Shown: positions 28,118 to 41,245 of the stretch, piece by piece
Position numbering within the stretch: the first letter of the stretch is position 1
How the letters are laid out: each line of letters opens with the position of its first letter
Position numbers and translations under genes: made by a program
Notes under the pieces: generated by a model
Told to the model about the DNA's origin: nothing
The model's database searches: none
What the model saw: the letters and a program-made list of their open reading frames with translations, nothing else
NCBI GenBank assembly: GCA_004431415.1
Contig: QPMI01000305.1
Coordinates: 1-51,569 of the forward strand
Length of the DNA: 51,569 nt
Source of the DNA: Cyanophora paradoxa CCMP329
Taxonomy: Eukaryota; Plantae; Glaucophyta
Direction of reading: 5' to 3'

Positions 28118-28294
28118 CCCCCCGCCCCGCCCCGCCGCCCCGCCGCCGGGGCAGCGCCGCTGCTCCGTTATTGTACACCTATCTAAGCATAACAATCGAT
28201 ACCGACCCACGGCGACGGGCGCGGGAGGGCGGAGCGGGGACGGGCGCGGGGGCGGGGGCGGTGCAGAAGCGGGCCCAGGCGGGGCGGGGTGGGG

Positions 28295-29974
28295 TCAGGA
28301 GTAGACGAGGAAGTCGGGGCGGCCGGTGAAGCGCTCGGCGAATGCCTTGCCGGAGGGCGTCGGCTGCGAGAAGGCGACCTCCGCCCGCTCCACGGCGCCC
28401 CCGAAGCGAAAGTTCGTCCTGCCCGCCCCGCCCCGTCGGCGCCGGCGGCGACGGGGGCGGGCGAGTGCGGCGGGGGGCGGACCGGAGTGCGTCGAGGAGG
28501 CGGCGGGCGACGCCGGCGCGGCGGTGGCCCGGGGCGACCCAGAGCTGGCGCACGCCGACCTGGCACGCCACCGGCTCCGTCGAGCGGCAGACGGTAGTCC
28601 CGTCGCAGCCGTCGGCCGCCGGCAGCACGCGGAAGCCCTGCCCGACCGCCTCCGCGACCGCGCAGCCGACGACCTTGCCCCGGGCGCTCACGTACAGGTA
28701 CACCTGCGCGGCAGAGCAGGGCGTCAGGCGCGGCCGGCGATGGCGGCAGTCGAGGGGCGTGCGGGGCGTGCCTGGATGGCGGCGGGGTCCTGGTTGGGGT
28801 CCGTGGCGTAGCCGAGCTCCTTGCTGACGACCTCGAGGACCTCCTCCACCTGCCGCCCTCTGTCAGCCGCAGCGCGGGCGGGGCGGGGCGGGCGGGCGGG
28901 GCGGGGCGGGCGGGCCTTGCGGCGGTAGAGGCGGAGGTCCTCCTTGCCGGCGACCATGACGATGCGGGCGCCCTCGTCGAAGCGCCCCACCACGCGCTCC
29001 TTCTTCCACCCCTGCGCGGGAGTGAGGCCGGCCGGCGCGGGGCAGGGCGGGGCGGGCGGGCGCACGGGGAAGTCGATGCCGTGGGTGTGGCGCCTGTGGA
29101 TGCGGGCGTGAAGGGCCTCGTCCTCGGGCACGCCGCGCGTGTACATCGCCCCGCACTCCCGGCACGTGTCCAGCGCCCGGAGGCTCTTCTGCCCCACGTC
29201 GATCACCAGCTGCCTCCCCCGCTTCGACGCGCTCGCCGCCGCCTTCGCCTTCTTCGGGGCCTGCCGCGGCGGCTGCTGCGCCGGCAACGGGCGCTCGTTC
29301 TCCTCGTCCTCCTCCGCGGGCGGCGGGGCCGCCTTGGAGCCGCTCGTCTCGGCTCCGGCGTCGCCGGCGTCATCGGAGGAGGAGGCCAGCGGCCTGTCCT
29401 CCTCCGGCGGGATGTTCTCCTTGTCGGCCTCCCACCAGTCCTCCTCGAACAGCGTTCCCACCGGCGGATACACGTGCCGCACCGTCCGCCTCTGTGCCGC
29501 AGCGGAGCTGCTGCTGCCGGCGGCTACAGGCGACAGCGGGCTGCGCGGGGCCGGGCGCGGAGTGCTGCTGCTGTTCGCCCTGTGCTGGGATGCGCGCGTC
29601 GGCCGAGCCGCATGCGCTGAATCCGGAGAGATGAGGTCCATGAACGGCTTAGATGCGGATGATCTACGGCTGGCGCTTGTGCTCGGCGACATCGAATCTG
29701 CATTTTGAATCGCGGTTAGCGCAGGCCGGAGTGCGTAAGCGCCTGCAGTGCAAGTCACCTGTAGATGCAGTGTGTTTTGCTCTTATGTTCTCTTCTTCGT
29801 CCGAGAGCCAAACTGGCTCCGCCTGTTGACTGGATTCTGATCTGCACAGGTTCAAGTTTGAGCGCTTCGGATAAAGCAGACGCAGCGTGCAGGGGCACAC
29901 TTGACGGCGGATGCTGCTCGCTTGCGGTTGTGCGTCACGCTGCTCGTGTTCTCCGCGCCCTGCGACCTCTCCAT
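28295..29974 (-). CDS. ECO1: Cohesin acetyltransferase Eco1/ESCO family
   Basis: PIP-like QLVIDVGQK, zinc finger CRECGAMYTRGVPEDEALHARIH, then GWKKERVV, GVRQLWVAPGHRRAGVARRLLD and VAFSQPTPSGKAFA...FLVYS*. Start MERSQG at 29974 reached via two GT-AG introns. Confidence 0.93.
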
Positions 29975-30357
29975 CCTGATGCCAGACTCGCGTCAGCTCA
30001 AATTGGGCGCAACAAGCACGGTGCAAGCACGCGCGGGGGGCACCTGCTCCGTTCGCTCGCCGTGCTGGAGCGATCTGCGGCGATCTGGGACAGGCTGTGG
30101 CCCTGCGCGTCGCGGTTGCCGGCGGATCGGCTGGACGAGGGCTCCGTGCTGGAGCTGCTTGCGTTCGAGCGGGACGCGCTCTTCGGGGCGAAATACGACA
30201 GGATGCACGCCTGGCTCTTGCCGCCCGAGGCCATTTCAAGAGTTCAAACTGCGGGGTACGGGCGTCACTTAGCCGGCCACGTACCCCGGCCCACCCCGGC
30301 CCCCCTCGGACTTGCGCTCAGCCTCACATCGGGTCGCTCCTCGCTCCTCCAGCCACG

Positions 30358-31302
30358 ATGTTCGGCGGCTGGTTCGATTGGGTGTGGGGCGTTCTCAGCT
30401 ACCTCGGTGCGTCGCATCGCTCGCGGCGCCGCTCGGGCTCACGATTCGAGTTTCAGGTCTGTACTACAAGAGCGGGAAGATCCTCTTTCTCGGGCTCGAC
30501 AATGCGGGCAAGACAACGCTTATGCACAGGCTAAAGGATGACCGCCTGGCGCAGCATCAGCCCACTCAGTACCCGAGTGAGTGACGTGTGCGGGCTTCGC
30601 ACGGACTTCCTGACCCATCCCACGCAGCATCGGAGGAGTTGACGATCGGCAAGATCAAGTTCCGCGCGTTCGACCTCGGCGGCCACACTCGCGGTGCGCC
30701 GCTTGAAAGTTCTGCCGCACGCGGAATGGTCGCGGCGCTGACCCGCTCCCGTGCTGGATTGCAGCGCGGACCGTGTGGAAGGACTATTTCCCGCAAGTGG
30801 ACGGTGTTGTGTTCCTCGTCGACTCGCTCGACCGGGAGCGCTTCCCGGAGAGCAAGAAGGAACTCGATGTGCGTCGCGGCGGCACATTGTGCGACACTCG
30901 CGCATTGCTCACAAGCTGTTGAATGTGCAGGCACTCCTTTCGTGCGACGAGCTGGCGAATGTGCCGTTCCTGATTCTCGGCAACAAGATCGACCAGCCCA
31001 AGGCGGCCTCGGAAGAGGAGCTCCGGGCCAACCTTGGCCTCCTTCTCACCACCGGCAAGGTACGAAGCGTGGCGCTCGAGATGACTTCGTCTTCGAATCG
31101 CGCGCGGCTGACCGTCGTGCTTTGTCCGTTTAATAGGGCAAGGTCCCGCGCGGTGACATCCGCCCCATCGAGGTGTTCATGTGCAGCGTCGTCAACCGTA
31201 TGGGCTACGGCGAGGGTCAGCGTTTCTGGTTCCTTGAGCGCGCGTACAAATGCTGACGTAGTGCGACCAGGCTTCCGGTGGCTGTCCCAGTACATCAACT
31301 AA
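30358..31302 (+). CDS. SAR1: Small GTPase Sar1 (COPII), 7 exons
   Basis: [17 protein letters not shown]|[40 protein letters not shown]|[19 protein letters not shown]...ILGNKID...[19 protein letters not shown]|FRWLSQYIN*. Six GT-AG introns. Confidence 0.98.
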
Positions 31303-31726: not shown

Positions 31727-32448
31727 TCATAGCTGGACACCAAACTTTTCGAAGTTCTTTGTCAACACCCCTATCTTCAGGTGCACGGTCCCCGTCGCTA
31801 TCGTCTTCAGCCGAAAGCGATCCGAACCAGATGTCACGTACTCTTCGTGCTTCAGCTGCGGGTTGCCCCCAATAAAGAAAGCTGCGCGAACAGTTGTAAA
31901 TAAGGGATCTTGCTGTATGGAGGGGCAAGGCCGATGGCGCGGCGCACCAGAGAAGCGCTCCGACCACGACCCGACCGGCCTCCAGCACGGCACCTCAAGA
32001 TCGAACACGCCAGGCGACGCAGGCAAATGGCAGAATCCATATCCAGCTGTCAGAAAGTGCGCCCGGCGGCAAGTGAGCAGGGTGGGCGAGCACTGCAGCG
32101 CTCAAAAGTCTTGCGGACCCAGGTCGTTCCTGCCGAAGATGTCTTCAGACCAGACTTGAAACCGAATCTTAGGCCAGCCTGCAACGCTCTTTGCAGCGTA
32201 GTGAATGTCGATCGGGTGGCTCCAGATCGCCGGCTGCGCTTCCTGCGGTGGCGGGAGTCGTACGGGCTCGACTTTGGGGCGCGGCGGCGCGTGCGCACGT
32301 CTGGATAGTCGATTTGTGTCTGTCCCTTCTCCAGACCCTCGAGCAGCTTCCACTGCGGACTCGCCTCCACTTTGAATTCGCAGAAGACGCCCGAGCTCTG
32401 AAAGCCCGAGGCTCCTACGATGGAGCCGATGAAGTGCACTTCCGACAT
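31727..32448 (-). CDS. B9D2: B9 domain-containing protein 2 (ciliary transition zone, MKS module), 4 exons
   Basis: MSEVHFIGSIVGASGF...GQTQIDYPD|EAQPAIWSHPIDIHYAAKSVAGWPKIRFQVWSEDIFGRNDL|AGYGFCHLPASPG...CWRPVGSW...FFIGGNPQL...DRFRLKTIATGTVHLKIGVLTKNFEKFGVQL*. Confidence 0.95.
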
Positions 32449-32765: not shown

Positions 32766-34222
32766 ATGCAGGCCGCACGCCGTCCGCCTCGCCGGCGGCT
32801 CCGGGCGCTGCTCATCTTCTTGACCGTATCAATAATCGTAGTCTATGTATTCAACAAAGGCGGCGCAAGGAAGACAGGCATCAAGCCGCGCGCTCGGACC
32901 GAGGCCGAGGAGAAGTCCTACGCGCACACCCGCTCTTTCTGGACGAATGCGCGTCGCCGTACGCGCCCTTCCTGTTGCCGGGTCTCACGAAAGTATGCGC
33001 AGGCTGAGGCGTCGGTGAAAGGCGTGACTGGCGGCTTCGAGAGCATCAGTCCGCATGACACCAAGACGAGTGAGCCAGCTCCGCGCTCCCCCGCCGCTGC
33101 AGCTCACGCCTGTCGCAGCGATGGACTTTATCCGGTCCGGCGCCGACGCGCGGCTCGCGCTCGGCCTCGGGCGCTGACACGGGCGAGCGCTCAGGGGGCT
33201 GATGGGGCTGCCGGAGGGGGAGCCCCGGGAGGACCTCGTCGCCATCGACATCGCGGCGGGTCCGCACGGCGGTCCCGCCCCCGCCCTCGCCGGCGGCAGG
33301 GCGGGCGGGGCTGAGGGGGCGCGGGGCAGGGGTGGGGCGGGTGACGAAGGGGGCCCTGGTGCACCTCTTCCGGGAGGTGGACCTGCTGGAGCAGAACGGG
33401 AAGAGCCTGGAGGAGGCGAAGCGGGCGCTGGCGGACGCCCCGGCCGGCCGCACCTTCCGCTTCATAAACGAGGGCATGCACGAGCACGTCTTCGAGCCCG
33501 AGGTGCGTTGTTCTCCTTCCCCGCGCCCGCCGCGCCCCCTGACCCGGCCGCGCCGCCGACAGCGGTACCACTTCGCCCTTATGAACTGGTGCGCGGCGCG
33601 GGGCGGGGCGCCGGCGGCGGCGCCGGCGCCGGCCTGAGGGCGCGCAGGGCCGGGGGGTACATCTCGGATGAGGACTTTTTGGACCTGCTCGTGCGGGTCC
33701 GCTCGGGCCTGAAGAGGGGCGGCTACGCCCTCGTCAAGGTCCCCGGCCCCGCCCCGCCCCGCCTGCGTCGGTCCGGCCGCGGGGCCGAGGGGCGGGATGG
33801 GGCCGGGGCGGGGCAGGACAACGTGGCGGAGACGCCGTTCGTGGACTCGAAGGACGGGCAGCGGGTGCGCTCGGACGCGCAGCTGAAGAAGCTCTTCGCC
33901 CAGGCCGGCTTCGCCGTCCTCTCCGAGAAGAACCAGGTCCGCCGGCCCCGCCTCGCCCCTTCAGTCTCCTTGTCCCGCCCCTCTGTGCTCCGCCCCCGAC
34001 GCCGGCGCAGGACGGCTTCCCGACGACCATCGTGGGGGTGCGCGGGGCGCGGGGCGCGGGGCGGGGCGGGGCGGGGCGCCGGGGGCCCGGGGCCCGCCTC
34101 CTCTCGCGCCTGACGGCCCGGGCCCTCAGGTGAAGATGTACGGGCTGCGGCCCCTGGAGGACGCGCAGGCTCCCGCCCCCGCCCCGCCCGCCCAGGCCGC
34201 CCCCGGCCCCGCCTCTTCCTGA
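32766..34222 (+). CDS. NTMT1-like (alpha-N-terminal protein methyltransferase fold) SAM-dependent methyltransferase with N-terminal signal anchor, paralog A
   Basis: MQAARRPPRRRLRALLIFLTVSIIVVYVF; FWTN|AEASVKGVTGGFESIS; AIDIAAG|VGRVTK; VDLLEQ; NW|AGGYISDED; K|DNVA; DSKDGQRVRSD; DGFP...VKMYGLRP; stop 34220-34222. Confidence 0.87.
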
Positions 34223-34492
34223 GCCGCCCGTCGGCGCCGCAAAGCTTAAGCCGCGGCTGCAGGCCGGTGGTCAGGGTCCTAGGGTCCCCCCCGCGCGCCC
34301 TGCGGGCGCCTATTCGAATTCAGGCAGCTGCAGAGACCATGAATGCATTCAAGAATAGCCAATATCCTGCAAGAATACAATTAGACTTGCAATGGGGAAT
34401 ACACTGCCATACTAGAACGAGGCTACACTAGCTATGGGACCGCCAAGCGCGGGCGCCCGGCCGGGGGGAGGAGGCGGGGGCCGCGGCCGGGG

Positions 34493-35935
34493 TCAGCTGT
34501 CCTCGGGGCGGAGGCCGTACATTTTGACGGGGACGATCTCCGCGGGGAAGCCCTCCTGCGGGGCGGTCGGCGGGGCCCGGGCCGGAGGGGGGGAGGGGAG
34601 GGGGGGCCGGCCCACCTGGACCTTCTCCGCCAGCAGCTTGTACCCCGCCTGCTCAGCGGCCGTGGGTCAGGGGCCGCCGGGCGGGGCTGGGCGGGGCGGG
34701 CGGGCGGGCGGGGCGGGGCGCCTTCTCGAAGAGGGCCTTGAGGGTGGCGTCGTCGCGGATGCGCTGCTTGTCCTTGCCGTCCTGGAAGCGCTCGCGGGCC
34801 ACGTTGTCCTTGAACACCAGCGCCCCGCCCGCCTTCAGCCCGAACCGCGCCCGCGTCAGCAGGTCCACAAGGTCCTGCCCCGCCGTCAGCCAGCGAGCGA
34901 GCGGGGCCCCGGGAGCCCACTGCAAGGGGCGGGCGCGGGGACCTCGTCGGTCAGGTAGCCGGCCGACCTGCGCCGCCGCGCGTCAGCTGCAGGGGCGGGG
35001 GTCAGGCGGCGGTGCGGGGCACCAGTCGATGAGGACGAGGTCGTAGCGCTGCGCCTCGAACGCGAACTCTGCCCCCGCGCCCCGTCGGCCCTCGCGCCGC
35101 GCGCCCCGCCCCGCGCCCCGCGCCCCGCGCCGGCGTGCGGGCCCCGCGTGGCGCACCGTGCATTCCCTGCTGGATGAAGTTGATCTTCCGCTTGCTGTCC
35201 TTCAGGTTCTCCCGCGCCTTGTCCAGGAACCGCGCCTCCTGCTCCAGCACGCTGCCGCCGGCCCCGGCTCGGCTCGCGCGGCGCCGGCGGGCGAGCTCAC
35301 GGGCCGGGCGCAGCGCACTCGATCTCCGTGAAGTCGTGCACGAGCACGCCCTTCGTGACACGGCCGACGCCTGCGCACGCGCGTCGAACGTCGAACTTGC
35401 GGCCGCGGCTGAACGGGCGGACCTGCCCCGCAGTCTATTGCGACGCGCGGCTGCGTGGGCTCGCCGGGGGGCAGTTTCATCAATTCCCGTGTGAAAGCAA
35501 GCGCTGCGCAGGGCCCATCAGGGAGAGCGCCGCGACGCCGAGCTCAAGAAGCGGACTCGTGTCGGTGTCCAGCTTGGAGATGTGGCTGTAGCCTGCCATG
35601 ACGCCATCATCGTTCGCCTTTATCTGCGCGAAAGCGCGCTCAGCGGGGGAGCGTGTGGCGGATCCGGCCGCGGAGAAGTACTAGTTCCGAGCTTGAGCTG
35701 AACCAATTACGCGGGTCGCGCTCACAGCGCGCAGCTTATCTGCGCTCACCGTGCTCCAGAACTGCTTGCTCTCGCCGTACTGCTGCTCCTCCTCGGTCGT
35801 GCGCGACGTGCGCGGCGCGAGCTTCCCACTTGGGCTACTCGGTCGCGTCGCAACGTATGCGACTATCCCGAGCACCAGCGCGATTGCGAGTACGCGCAGA
35901 CGCCGCCGCGGCGGCCTGGTCGCAGCGCCAGCCAT
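34493..35935 (-). CDS. NTMT1-like SAM-dependent methyltransferase with N-terminal signal anchor, paralog B
   Basis: MAGAATRPPRRRLRVLAIALVLGIVAYVA; FWST|IKANDDGVMAGYSHIS; AIDCGAG|VGRVTK; VLEQ; RYDLVLIDW|SAGYLTDE; FKDNVA; DGKDKQRIRDD; EGFPAEIVPVKMYGLRPEDS*. Confidence 0.88.
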
Positions 35936-36115
35936 CGCAGGAGGGGTACGCCTTTCGAGCCAACTTCAACTTCGATCCTTGCAATAGCCTGCGGGCTGCA
36001 GCTGTGAGCTCCGTTGTTTCTGCTTGGCTTTGCGGGATCAGGCTGTCCCGAGGAGGACAAGCTTAGCTCGCAGTTGGGCAGCGGACAGCTTGCTTGGCCG
36101 CAGACTGCAGCAGCG

Positions 36116-41245
<5,130 letters not shown>

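What the first reader, a model, noticed from the sequence alone, without database searches (positions are those of the whole stretch)
32766..35935. Two NTMT1-like methyltransferases with type II membrane (Golgi-enzyme-like) N-termini
Seen: both paralogs begin with a short basic tail (RPPRRRLR), a ~16-residue hydrophobic helix and a stem before the catalytic domain. Known: NTMT1/Tae1 enzymes are soluble nuclear or cytosolic proteins that methylate X-Pro-Lys N-termini; tail-TM-stem-catalytic is the topology of Golgi glycosyl- and methyltransferases. The SAM motif (DxxAGVGRVTK), the Trp, KDN and the DxxD acid pair are kept, while the GHL His position is Tyr. Inference: a lumenal branch that may methylate N-termini exposed by signal cleavage, or amino-glycans or lipids.
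Basis: partly seen in the sequence, partly recalled or inferred. Interest (0 to 1): 0.8.

Follow-up and report, generated by a model that had tools for sequence, protein, structure and literature searches.

The report
Membrane-anchored NTMT1-like methyltransferase pair
The alga Cyanophora paradoxa has two neighbouring genes for protein N-terminal methyltransferases (NTMT1 type) that, unlike the known soluble enzymes, start with a conserved basic tail and a membrane helix; they probably work inside the ER or Golgi, where this protein modification is unknown, but the orientation is only predicted.

Summary
Two convergent 10-exon genes (32766-34222 +, 286 aa; 35935-34493 -, 266 aa) match the public Cyanophora paradoxa models g8074 and g8075 (P0001, P0004).

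**Family.** Both are full-length PF05891/NTMT1 enzymes (160 and 197 bits). The AF2 model (pLDDT 94.7) matches NTMT1 at TM 0.92.

**N-terminus.** Both begin with RPPRRRLR, then 16 hydrophobic residues and a poorly conserved linker, all in the same exon as the first catalytic helix. The tail is the best-conserved part (11/13 identical, against 53% in the domain). Six of its eight codons differ synonymously.

**Active site.** W20, R74, W136, N168, D177 and D180 are kept. The His-to-Tyr change is ordinary (Tyr in 62 of 124 homologues). The unusual changes are Q135 to D/N, at a site invariant elsewhere, and S182 to Q.

**Lumenal reading: partly supported.**
- For: the pair has the fewest cysteines in the catalytic domain of 138 homologues (0 and 1; median 5). 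Signal-peptide-bearing homologues exist in euglenids, Haematococcus and one unidentified transcriptome.
- Against: both flanks of the helix are basic. Cleavage, orientation and a separate soluble NTMT1 in this genome could not be tested.

The signal-bearing forms are not one branch (p-AU 0.028), though Cyanophora plus the euglenids is not rejected (0.48). I found no description of such enzymes. This is a new variant of a known kind.

The parts
32766..34222 (+). Gene 1 (public model tig00001299_g8074.t1 = P0001, 286 aa). Ten exons: 32766-32948, 33003-33069, 33119-33134, 33195-33259, 33330-33502, 33563-33588, 33648-33738, 33817-33936, 34011-34037, 34130-34222.
   Evidence: Exon model in frame, 861 nt. 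Each exon translation is found in order in P0001. PF05891 at 160 bits, residues 48-263.
34493..35935 (-). Gene 2 (public model tig00001299_g8075.t1 = P0004, 266 aa). Ten exons: 35935-35750, 35623-35557, 35503-35423, 35370-35319, 35251-35157, 35068-35023, 34967-34943, 34874-34722, 34648-34616, 34555-34493.
   Evidence: Exon model in frame, 801 nt. Matches P0004. PF05891 at 197 bits. 2ex4 E 1e-39. AF2 pLDDT 94.7, Foldseek best match NTMT1.
32766..32804 (+). Gene 1 basic tail, aa 1-13 (MQAARRPPRRRLR), net charge +6.
   Evidence: Tail is 11/13 identical to gene 2. An in-frame TGA lies directly upstream.
32805..32852 (+). Gene 1 hydrophobic helix, aa 14-29 (ALLIFLTVSIIVVYVF).
   Evidence: 16 uncharged residues; best 15-residue Kyte-Doolittle window (aa 15-29) averages 2.97.
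32853..32903 (+). Gene 1 stem or linker, aa 30-46, basic and Gly/Pro-rich. The first catalytic helix (SYAHTRSFW) follows in the same exon.
   Evidence: Stem 4/17 identical between the paralogues. PF05891 starts at residue 48.
35894..35935 (-). Gene 2 basic tail, aa 1-14 (MAGAATRPPRRRLR), net charge +5.
   Evidence: Six of the eight RPPRRRLR codons differ synonymously from gene 1.
35846..35893 (-). Gene 2 hydrophobic helix, aa 15-30 (VLAIALVLGIVAYVAT).
   Evidence: Best 15-residue Kyte-Doolittle window (aa 15-29) averages 2.85. AF2 helix 10-29, pLDDT about 90.
35795..35845 (-). Gene 2 stem or linker, aa 31-47 (Pro/Ser/Thr/Arg-rich).
   Evidence: AF2 coil with lower pLDDT, about 75 for residues 31-40. 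Poorly conserved.
33195..33502 (+). Gene 1 exons 4-5: SAM-binding motif I (DIAAG/VGRVTK, R74 equivalent) and the following strand-helix units.
34722..34874 (-). Gene 2 exon 8: KDN (N168 equivalent) and the D..D pair (D177/D180 equivalents). Gln replaces the near-invariant Ser182.

Best explanation
The two genes are old tandem (tail-to-tail) paralogues in Cyanophora paradoxa. They encode SAM-dependent methyltransferases of the NTMT1/Tae1 family (PF05891) that have gained an N-terminal targeting and anchoring module: a conserved Arg-rich tail, a 16-residue hydrophobic helix and a flexible stem.

Most likely the helix acts as an uncleaved signal anchor that enters the ER with the Arg-rich tail left in the cytosol (type II). 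The catalytic domain would then sit in the ER or Golgi lumen, and the conserved tail would serve as a sorting signal.

The residues that hold an X-Pro-Lys/Arg N-terminus in human NTMT1 are kept. The likeliest chemistry is therefore alpha-N-methylation of protein N-termini, here those exposed in the lumen after signal-peptide removal. Substitutions at two otherwise near-invariant pocket positions may have shifted the specificity.

Shown: gene structures, family membership, fold, the N-terminal architecture and its conservation, and the cysteine depletion. Inferred: ER entry, orientation, lack of cleavage, substrate.
For: **Family and fold.** PF05891 over the full profile at 160 and 197 bits against a cut-off of 27. 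PDB sequence matches to NTMT1, NTMT2, yeast NTM1 and Leishmania 1xtp at E 1e-24 to 1e-39. AF2 pLDDT 94.7, with NTMT1 structures as best matches (E 1e-24, TM 0.92) and the next fold at 1e-12.

**Contact residues.** Equivalents of W20, R74, W136, N168, D177, D180, I37 and I214 are kept. Their roles are taken from PMC4691889 and PMC10293735.

**The anchor is not an annotation artefact.**
- Tail, helix, stem and the first catalytic helix share exon 1.
- M1 is the only Met there, and in-frame stops lie upstream.
- Both paralogues keep the module although they are only 53% identical and share just 5 of 9 intron positions.

**Tail under selection.** The tail is 11/13 identical, against 7/15 in the helix, 4/17 in the stem and 115/216 in the domain. 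Six of the eight RPPRRRLR codons differ synonymously, so this is selection and not recent gene conversion.

**Lumenal hint.** The catalytic domains have 0 and 1 Cys. These are the lowest of 138 homologues (others: median 5). Independently signal-bearing homologues have 1, 2, 2 and 5 (Mann-Whitney p 4e-4 counting all six; 0.007 counting four origins).

**Precedent within the family.** Homologues with clear N-terminal signal peptides occur in Euglena longa, Entosiphon, Haematococcus and one unidentified transcriptome. Haematococcus also keeps a canonical copy (P0278).

**Lumenal SAM use is plausible.** Candidate Golgi SAM transporters and secretory-pathway protein methyltransferases of other families have been described.
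Against: - Both flanks of the helix are strongly basic (N +6/+5; C +6/+4 within 15 residues). The positive-inside rule therefore does not decide the orientation.
- Sixteen hydrophobic residues lie between a long signal-peptide core and a short membrane span, and possible small-residue cleavage sites exist (GGA|R in gene 1, SPS|G in gene 2). Cleavage cannot be excluded. No SignalP or DeepTMHMM run was possible.
- No transcript evidence was obtained. The exact proteins are not on record in the contig collection.
- No canonical soluble NTMT1 of Cyanophora was found among the 30 homologues whose source I could look up or the 120 listed profile hits. If none exists, these two would have to serve cytosolic substrates.
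- Neither domain has an N-glycosylation sequon.
- Q135, invariant in 124 of 124 other homologues, is Asp or Asn here, so activity or substrate may differ from NTMT1.
Confidence: 0.5

Rival explanations
1. The hydrophobic stretch is a cleavable signal peptide. The mature enzymes would be soluble proteins of the ER or Golgi lumen, a vacuole or the cell exterior, not membrane-anchored type II proteins.
For: The other signal-bearing homologues (Euglena longa, Entosiphon, Haematococcus, GHVT) have classical cleavable-looking signal peptides. The 16-residue core is short for a membrane span. Small residues at -3 and -1 are available a few residues after the core (sequences). The cysteine depletion fits equally well.
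Against: The n-region is unusually long, Arg-rich and almost identical between paralogues that are 53% identical. That is unexpected for a peptide that is cut off and degraded, and expected for a retained cytosolic tail with a sorting role. The segment after the core is basic, not the usual polar c-region.
Confidence: 0.15
2. The helix anchors the enzyme in a membrane with the catalytic domain facing the cytosol, for example as a signal-anchored protein of the mitochondrial or plastid outer membrane or of the ER surface. There it would methylate ordinary cytosolic X-Pro-Lys substrates or nascent membrane proteins, comparable to the membrane-bound N-terminal acetyltransferase Naa60 (my own knowledge).
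For: The flank after the helix is basic, as in organelle outer-membrane signal anchors (the rule is from my own knowledge). All X-Pro-Lys contact residues are kept. No separate canonical NTMT1 of Cyanophora turned up.
Against: Six Arg in the 13-residue N-terminal flank make its translocation across a membrane unlikely, and are atypical of outer-membrane signal anchors. Gene 1's helix is very hydrophobic (Ile/Leu/Phe/Val), which favours SRP and the ER. A cytosolic domain would not explain why these two have the fewest cysteines of 138 homologues. My failure to find a canonical gene says little, because the genome itself could not be searched.
Confidence: 0.2
3. The N-terminus is a mitochondrial presequence plus a stop-transfer segment. 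This would place the enzyme in the inner membrane or intermembrane space.
For: Arg-rich N-terminus without acidic residues, followed by a hydrophobic segment.
Against: The basic part is only 13 residues and contains Pro-Pro, so it cannot form the usual amphipathic helix. AF2 starts the helix at residue 10. The intermembrane space is also oxidising, so the cysteine count does not discriminate.
Confidence: 0.07
4. Gene-model artefact: the real proteins start further downstream and are ordinary soluble NTMT1 enzymes.
For: No transcript evidence was obtained here.
Against: The next Met (residue 85 or 71) would delete the conserved first helix with the W20 equivalent that covers SAM. The module lies in the same exon and frame as that helix. 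It is kept in both paralogues with synonymous codon divergence.
Confidence: 0.03

Closest known systems
Human NTMT1/NRMT1 and NTMT2, yeast Tae1/NTM1, Leishmania LMAJ004091AAA (Pfam PF05891)
   Same: Same family and fold over the whole catalytic domain. Same SAM-binding residues and same X-Pro-Lys contact residues: W136, N168, D177, D180, I37, I214.
   Different: The known enzymes are soluble. The 2023 review of the field never uses the word 'membrane'. These two carry a basic tail, a hydrophobic helix and a stem. Q135 is Asp or Asn (Gln in 124 of 124 others), S182 is Gln, the Trp of the 'WY' motif is lost, and cysteines are nearly absent.
Signal-peptide-bearing PF05891 proteins in databases: Euglena longa P0005 and Entosiphon P0010 (each with two tandem domains), Haematococcus P0009, transcript GHVT01068039 P0065. 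I found no publication on them.
   Same: NTMT-family domains preceded by an N-terminal hydrophobic targeting sequence. Low cysteine counts (1-2) in three of the four. A clade of Cyanophora plus the euglenids is not rejected (p-AU 0.48).
   Different: Their N-termini look like ordinary cleavable signal peptides without the Arg-rich tail. The euglenid and Haematococcus proteins have lost one or both Lys-binding aspartates or W136, whereas the Cyanophora pair keeps them. Haematococcus and GHVT sit in other clades.
Type II Golgi glycosyl- and methyltransferases (for example plant pectin methyltransferases)
   Same: Short basic tail, single N-terminal helix, flexible stem, globular catalytic domain. 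A lumenal SAM supply is proposed for plants through putative Golgi SAM transporters.
   Different: Unrelated catalytic families that act on glycans. Here the catalytic domain is a protein alpha-N-methyltransferase type, and the topology is only predicted.
Secretory-pathway protein methyltransferases of other families: METTL9 (signal peptide; histidine methylation; reported as secreted) and the fungal seven-transmembrane methyltransferase that methylates His1 of LPMOs
   Same: Show that protein methylation can take place in the secretory pathway. The fungal enzyme modifies the N-terminal residue exposed by signal-peptide removal (bioRxiv 10.64898/2025.12.23.696137; PMC10349129).
   Different: Different folds or families and different atoms modified (the histidine side chain, not the alpha-amino group).

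Membership tests
NTMT1/Tae1 alpha-N-terminal methyltransferases (PF05891) | Full-length match to the family profile above the curated cut-off | tested here: met
   160.4 and 197.4 bits against a cut-off of 27, profile positions 2-218 of 218.
NTMT1/Tae1 alpha-N-terminal methyltransferases (PF05891) | NTMT1 fold (Rossmann core plus N-terminal helices and beta hairpin) | tested here: met
   AF2 pLDDT 94.7. The best 19 Foldseek matches are all NTMT1, NTMT2, ScNTM1 or 1xtp, TM up to 0.92, E 1e-22 to 1e-25; other methyltransferases are at 1e-12.
NTMT1/Tae1 alpha-N-terminal methyltransferases (PF05891) | SAM-binding residues (motif I, R74, W20) | tested here: met
   DCGAGVGR and DIAAGVGR; R74 and W20 equivalents present. 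Gene 1 has Ile and Ala in place of the Cys and first Gly of DCGAG, both seen in a few other members.
NTMT1/Tae1 alpha-N-terminal methyltransferases (PF05891) | X-Pro-Lys recognition residues W136, N168, D177, D180 | tested here: met
   All four kept in both proteins. Roles from PMC4691889.
NTMT1/Tae1 alpha-N-terminal methyltransferases (PF05891) | His140 as proposed general base | tested here: not met
   Tyr in both. However, Tyr is the commonest residue at this site (62 Tyr, 54 His of 124), and it is also Tyr in the 1xtp sequence, so His is not a family-wide requirement.
NTMT1/Tae1 alpha-N-terminal methyltransferases (PF05891) | Gln135 (IQW) and Ser182, invariant or near-invariant pocket-side residues | tested here: not met
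   Q135 is Gln in 124 of 124 others and Asp or Asn here. S182 is Ser in 113 of 124 others and Gln here. The consequence is unknown.
NTMT1/Tae1 alpha-N-terminal methyltransferases (PF05891) | Alpha-N-methylation of X-Pro-Lys/Arg peptides | not testable with these tools
   Needs an enzyme assay.
Type II signal-anchored ER/Golgi enzymes | Short basic N-terminal tail, one hydrophobic helix near the N-terminus, flexible stem, C-terminal catalytic domain | tested here: met
   Tail +6/+5, 16 uncharged residues, linker of 17 residues. AF2 helix 10-29 and lower-confidence coil 30-46.
Type II signal-anchored ER/Golgi enzymes | N-terminus cytosolic and C-terminus lumenal, judged by the charge difference across the helix | tested here: inconclusive
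   Both flanks are about equally basic (+6 against +6; +5 against +4).
Type II signal-anchored ER/Golgi enzymes | Domain adapted to an oxidising lumen (few unpaired cysteines) | tested here: met
   0 and 1 Cys against a median of 5; the lowest of 138 homologues. This is indirect evidence.
Type II signal-anchored ER/Golgi enzymes | Anchor not removed by signal peptidase; localisation in ER or Golgi | not testable with these tools
   No signal-peptide or topology predictor is available, and no experiment was possible.

The most novel reading that the evidence does not exclude
These are the first recognised lumenal protein alpha-N-terminal methyltransferases of eukaryotes. N-termini created by signal-peptide removal (X-Pro-Lys/Arg type) would be methylated inside the ER or Golgi of a glaucophyte. 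An old secretory offshoot of the NTMT family may be shared with euglenids, and was recruited again independently in green algae.
Probability: 0.3. Interest if true: 0.8.

Novelty: new variant of a known kind. Interest (0 to 1): 0.55.

Why it matters
Alpha-N-terminal methylation is known only from cytosolic and nuclear proteins, such as ribosomal proteins, histones, RCC1 and CENP-A/B, and from organelles and bacteria through other enzymes.

An NTMT-type enzyme facing the ER or Golgi lumen would extend this modification to secreted and membrane proteins. It would also imply a lumenal SAM supply in a glaucophyte. The prediction is testable: N-methylated X-Pro-Lys N-termini directly after signal-peptide cleavage sites.

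The near-complete loss of cysteines in the homologues that carry a signal sequence (three of four lineages) offers a simple sequence marker for finding other cytosolic enzyme families that were moved into the secretory pathway.

If the domain instead faces the cytosol, the pair would be a membrane-tethered N-terminal methyltransferase, a counterpart of the membrane-bound acetyltransferase Naa60. That is also undescribed.

Tried and rejected
- **Spliced sequences.** I did not build or submit a joined (spliced) sequence. Exons were searched one by one by reference. One natural stop-free ORF that contains exons 4, 7 and 8 was searched by reference and retrieved the public model P0001. All full-length work then used the ids P0001 and P0004.
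- **Word search.** With P0001 it gave only 3 hits and missed the paralogue, so the exhaustive search was used.
- **Single-sequence AF2 of P0001.** Useless, pLDDT 43.
- **Transcript or contig look-up by exact protein.** Nothing on record, so transcript starts remain untested.
- **Search for a canonical soluble NTMT1 of Cyanophora.** I looked up the source of 30 homologues, partly chosen by GC-rich amino-acid make-up, and ran a profile word search. Its 120 listed hits were mostly land plants and green algae. No Cyanophora protein other than the pair appeared. This is not evidence of absence, because the genome could not be searched. There is no third copy in the window.
- **Earlier notes of the scan.** They hold nothing on NTMT1 apart from this same finding.
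- **AU test on the 151-row tree.** Not finished after 864 s. It was replaced by a 44-row subset.
- **His-to-Tyr as a sign of changed chemistry.** Rejected; Tyr is the majority state.
- **Plastid (muroplast) transit peptide.** Considered and set aside. Glaucophyte transit peptides carry an N-terminal Phe and no hydrophobic core (my own knowledge), and neither protein has one.
- **Amino-glycan or lipid substrates.** Not favoured, because the peptide-contact residues are kept.
Full report
**What is there.** The window is very GC-rich eukaryotic DNA. Earlier notes of the scan name the genome as Cyanophora paradoxa. I confirmed this: the two proteins are EukProt entries of that species on contig tig00001299.

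I read the region exon by exon.
- Gene 1 lies on the + strand from 32766 to 34222. It has 10 exons, 861 nt and 286 codons.
- Gene 2 lies on the - strand from 35935 to 34493. It has 10 exons, 801 nt and 266 codons.
- The genes are convergent, with 270 bp between their stop codons.
- All introns end in AG. Sixteen begin with GT and two with GC: gene 1 intron 1 and gene 2 intron 8.

Single exons were searched by reference. A natural stop-free ORF that holds exons 4, 7 and 8 in frame was also searched by reference. That search returned the public model P0001, and the exhaustive search returned P0004. Every exon translation occurs in order in these two proteins. All full-length analyses use those ids.

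**Family.** Both proteins match Pfam PF05891 (AdoMet-dependent proline di-methyltransferase, the NTMT1/Tae1 family) over the whole profile, at 160 and 197 bits against a cut-off of 27. They match the solved structures of human NTMT1 and NTMT2, yeast NTM1 and Leishmania 1xtp at E 1e-24 to 1e-39. An AF2 model of P0004 built on 126 homologues has a mean pLDDT of 94.7. Its best structural matches are NTMT1 entries (E about 1e-24, TM 0.92), far ahead of other methyltransferases at 1e-12.

**The N-terminal module.**
- Gene 1 starts MQAARRPPRRRLR, then ALLIFLTVSIIVVYVF, then a basic Gly/Pro-rich linker.
- Gene 2 starts MAGAATRPPRRRLR, then VLAIALVLGIVAYVAT, then a Pro/Ser/Thr/Arg-rich linker.
- AF2 predicts a helix at residues 10-29 and a lower-confidence coil at 30-46 before the domain.

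The module is not a mis-joined exon. It shares exon 1 and the reading frame with the first catalytic helix, which contains the equivalent of W20, a SAM-positioning residue (PMC10293735). M1 is the only Met in exon 1, and in-frame stops lie just upstream. A start at the next Met (residue 85 or 71) would delete that helix.

The paralogues are 53% identical and share only 5 of 9 intron positions, so the duplication is old. Even so, the tail is 11/13 identical, against 7/15 for the helix, 4/17 for the stem and 115/216 for the domain. Six of the eight RPPRRRLR codons differ synonymously. The amino-acid sequence of the tail is therefore under selection. That fits a retained cytosolic sorting signal better than the n-region of a discarded signal peptide.

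**Active site.** Using the roles given in PMC4691889 and PMC10293735, the following equivalents are kept in both proteins:

| Residue (human NTMT1) | Role |
|---|---|
| W20, R74 | SAM binding |
| W136 | stacks on Pro2 |
| N168 | binds residue 1 |
| D177, D180 | bind Lys3 |
| I37, I214 | Pro pocket |

Among 124 other homologues the site is Tyr in 62 and His in 54, and it is Tyr in the 1xtp sequence too.

The truly unusual substitutions are these:
- Q135 to Asp or Asn (Gln in 124 of 124 others).
- S182 to Gln (Ser in 113 of 124 others).
- Loss of the Trp in the upstream 'WY' motif.

Together with the long stem branch of the pair (0.83), this suggests changed specificity within the same chemistry.

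**Which way does the domain face?**

The positive-inside rule does not help, because both flanks are basic (+6/+6 and +5/+4 within 15 residues). Six Arg in a 13-residue N-terminal flank argue against translocating that flank. So if the protein enters the ER, the domain should be lumenal. A 16-residue core is short for a membrane span and long for a signal-peptide core, so cleavage cannot be excluded.

An independent hint comes from cysteines. The catalytic domains have 0 and 1 Cys, the lowest of 138 homologues. The other homologues have a median of 5. The other homologues with N-terminal signal sequences have 1, 2, 2 and 5 (Mann-Whitney p 4e-4, or 0.007 when the Cyanophora and euglenid pairs are each counted once). 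Loss of free cysteines is what one expects in an oxidising compartment. This is indirect, and it is not controlled against genome-wide composition. Neither domain has an N-glycosylation sequon.

**Relatives.** The exhaustive search found 1166 homologues, 556 of them at E below 1e-10. Of the 153 proteins examined, 6 carry an N-terminal signal or anchor before the domain:
- the Cyanophora pair;
- Euglena longa P0005 and Entosiphon P0010, each with two tandem domains;
- Haematococcus P0009;
- an unidentified transcript, P0065.

Haematococcus also has a canonical copy, P0278.

In the 151-row tree the pair is a fully supported unit with no supported sister, and the label needs 4 changes. On a 44-row subset:
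- Holding all six together costs 45.6 log-likelihood units (p-AU 0.028).
- Cyanophora plus the euglenids costs only 1.8 (p-AU 0.48).

Recruitment to the secretory pathway therefore happened more than once. An old offshoot shared by glaucophytes and euglenids is neither shown nor excluded, and long branches are involved. The euglenid and Haematococcus proteins have lost parts of the X-Pro-Lys site. The Cyanophora pair has not.

**What I could not settle.** I could not test whether Cyanophora also has an ordinary soluble NTMT1. None appeared among the 30 homologues whose source I could read or among the 120 listed profile hits, but the genome itself was not searchable. The window has no third copy. 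No transcript record was found.

**Literature.** I found no paper on signal-anchored or lumenal NTMT enzymes. The 2023 review of the field does not use the word 'membrane'. There are precedents for methylation in the secretory pathway from other families:
- METTL9, which has a signal peptide and is reported as secreted.
- The fungal seven-transmembrane enzyme that methylates His1 of LPMOs after signal-peptide removal.
- Putative Golgi SAM transporters in plants.

**Verdict.** The type II, lumenal reading is the best single explanation, at about 0.5. The rivals are a cleaved signal peptide (0.15), a cytosol-facing membrane anchor (0.2), mitochondrial targeting (0.07) and a gene-model artefact (0.03). 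I class it as a new variant of a known kind, of moderate to good interest.

Noticed in passing
window 30312-31300 (+): A spliced Arf-family GTPase gene lies about 1.5 kb upstream of gene 1. The ORF fragments hit PF00025 (E 1e-11 and 1e-9). By eye the sequence ([15 protein letters not shown]..., FDLGGH) looks like Sar1, the ER-export GTPase. I treat the adjacency to the anchored methyltransferases as coincidence.
   Followed up: partly
window 32050-32448 (-): First exon of a B9-domain ciliary transition-zone protein (PF07162, E 8e-12), directly upstream of gene 1 and divergent from it.
   Followed up: partly
window 28179-29758 (-): ESCO/Eco1-type cohesin acetyltransferase gene: the ESCO zinc finger (PF13878, E 5e-13) and the ESCO acetyltransferase domain (PF13880) lie in two adjacent ORFs.
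   Followed up: partly
window 32949-33002 (+) and 34649-34721 (-): Two of the 18 introns of the pair have GC-AG borders. Most introns here are 50-130 nt long and built from GGGGC/GCCCC-type repeats.
   Followed up: partly
P0005 (Euglena longa) and P0010 (Entosiphon sulcatum): The euglenid homologues have a signal peptide followed by two tandem PF05891 domains in one protein. Several substrate-contact residues are changed (W136 to Tyr or Phe in some domains; D177 or D180 lost). I found no description of them.
   Followed up: partly
window 36014-37369 (+): A long GC-rich ORF starts just beyond gene 2 (MSDSEEDE... at about 36117) and has hydrophobic stretches. It has no Pfam match and was not examined further.
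   Followed up: no
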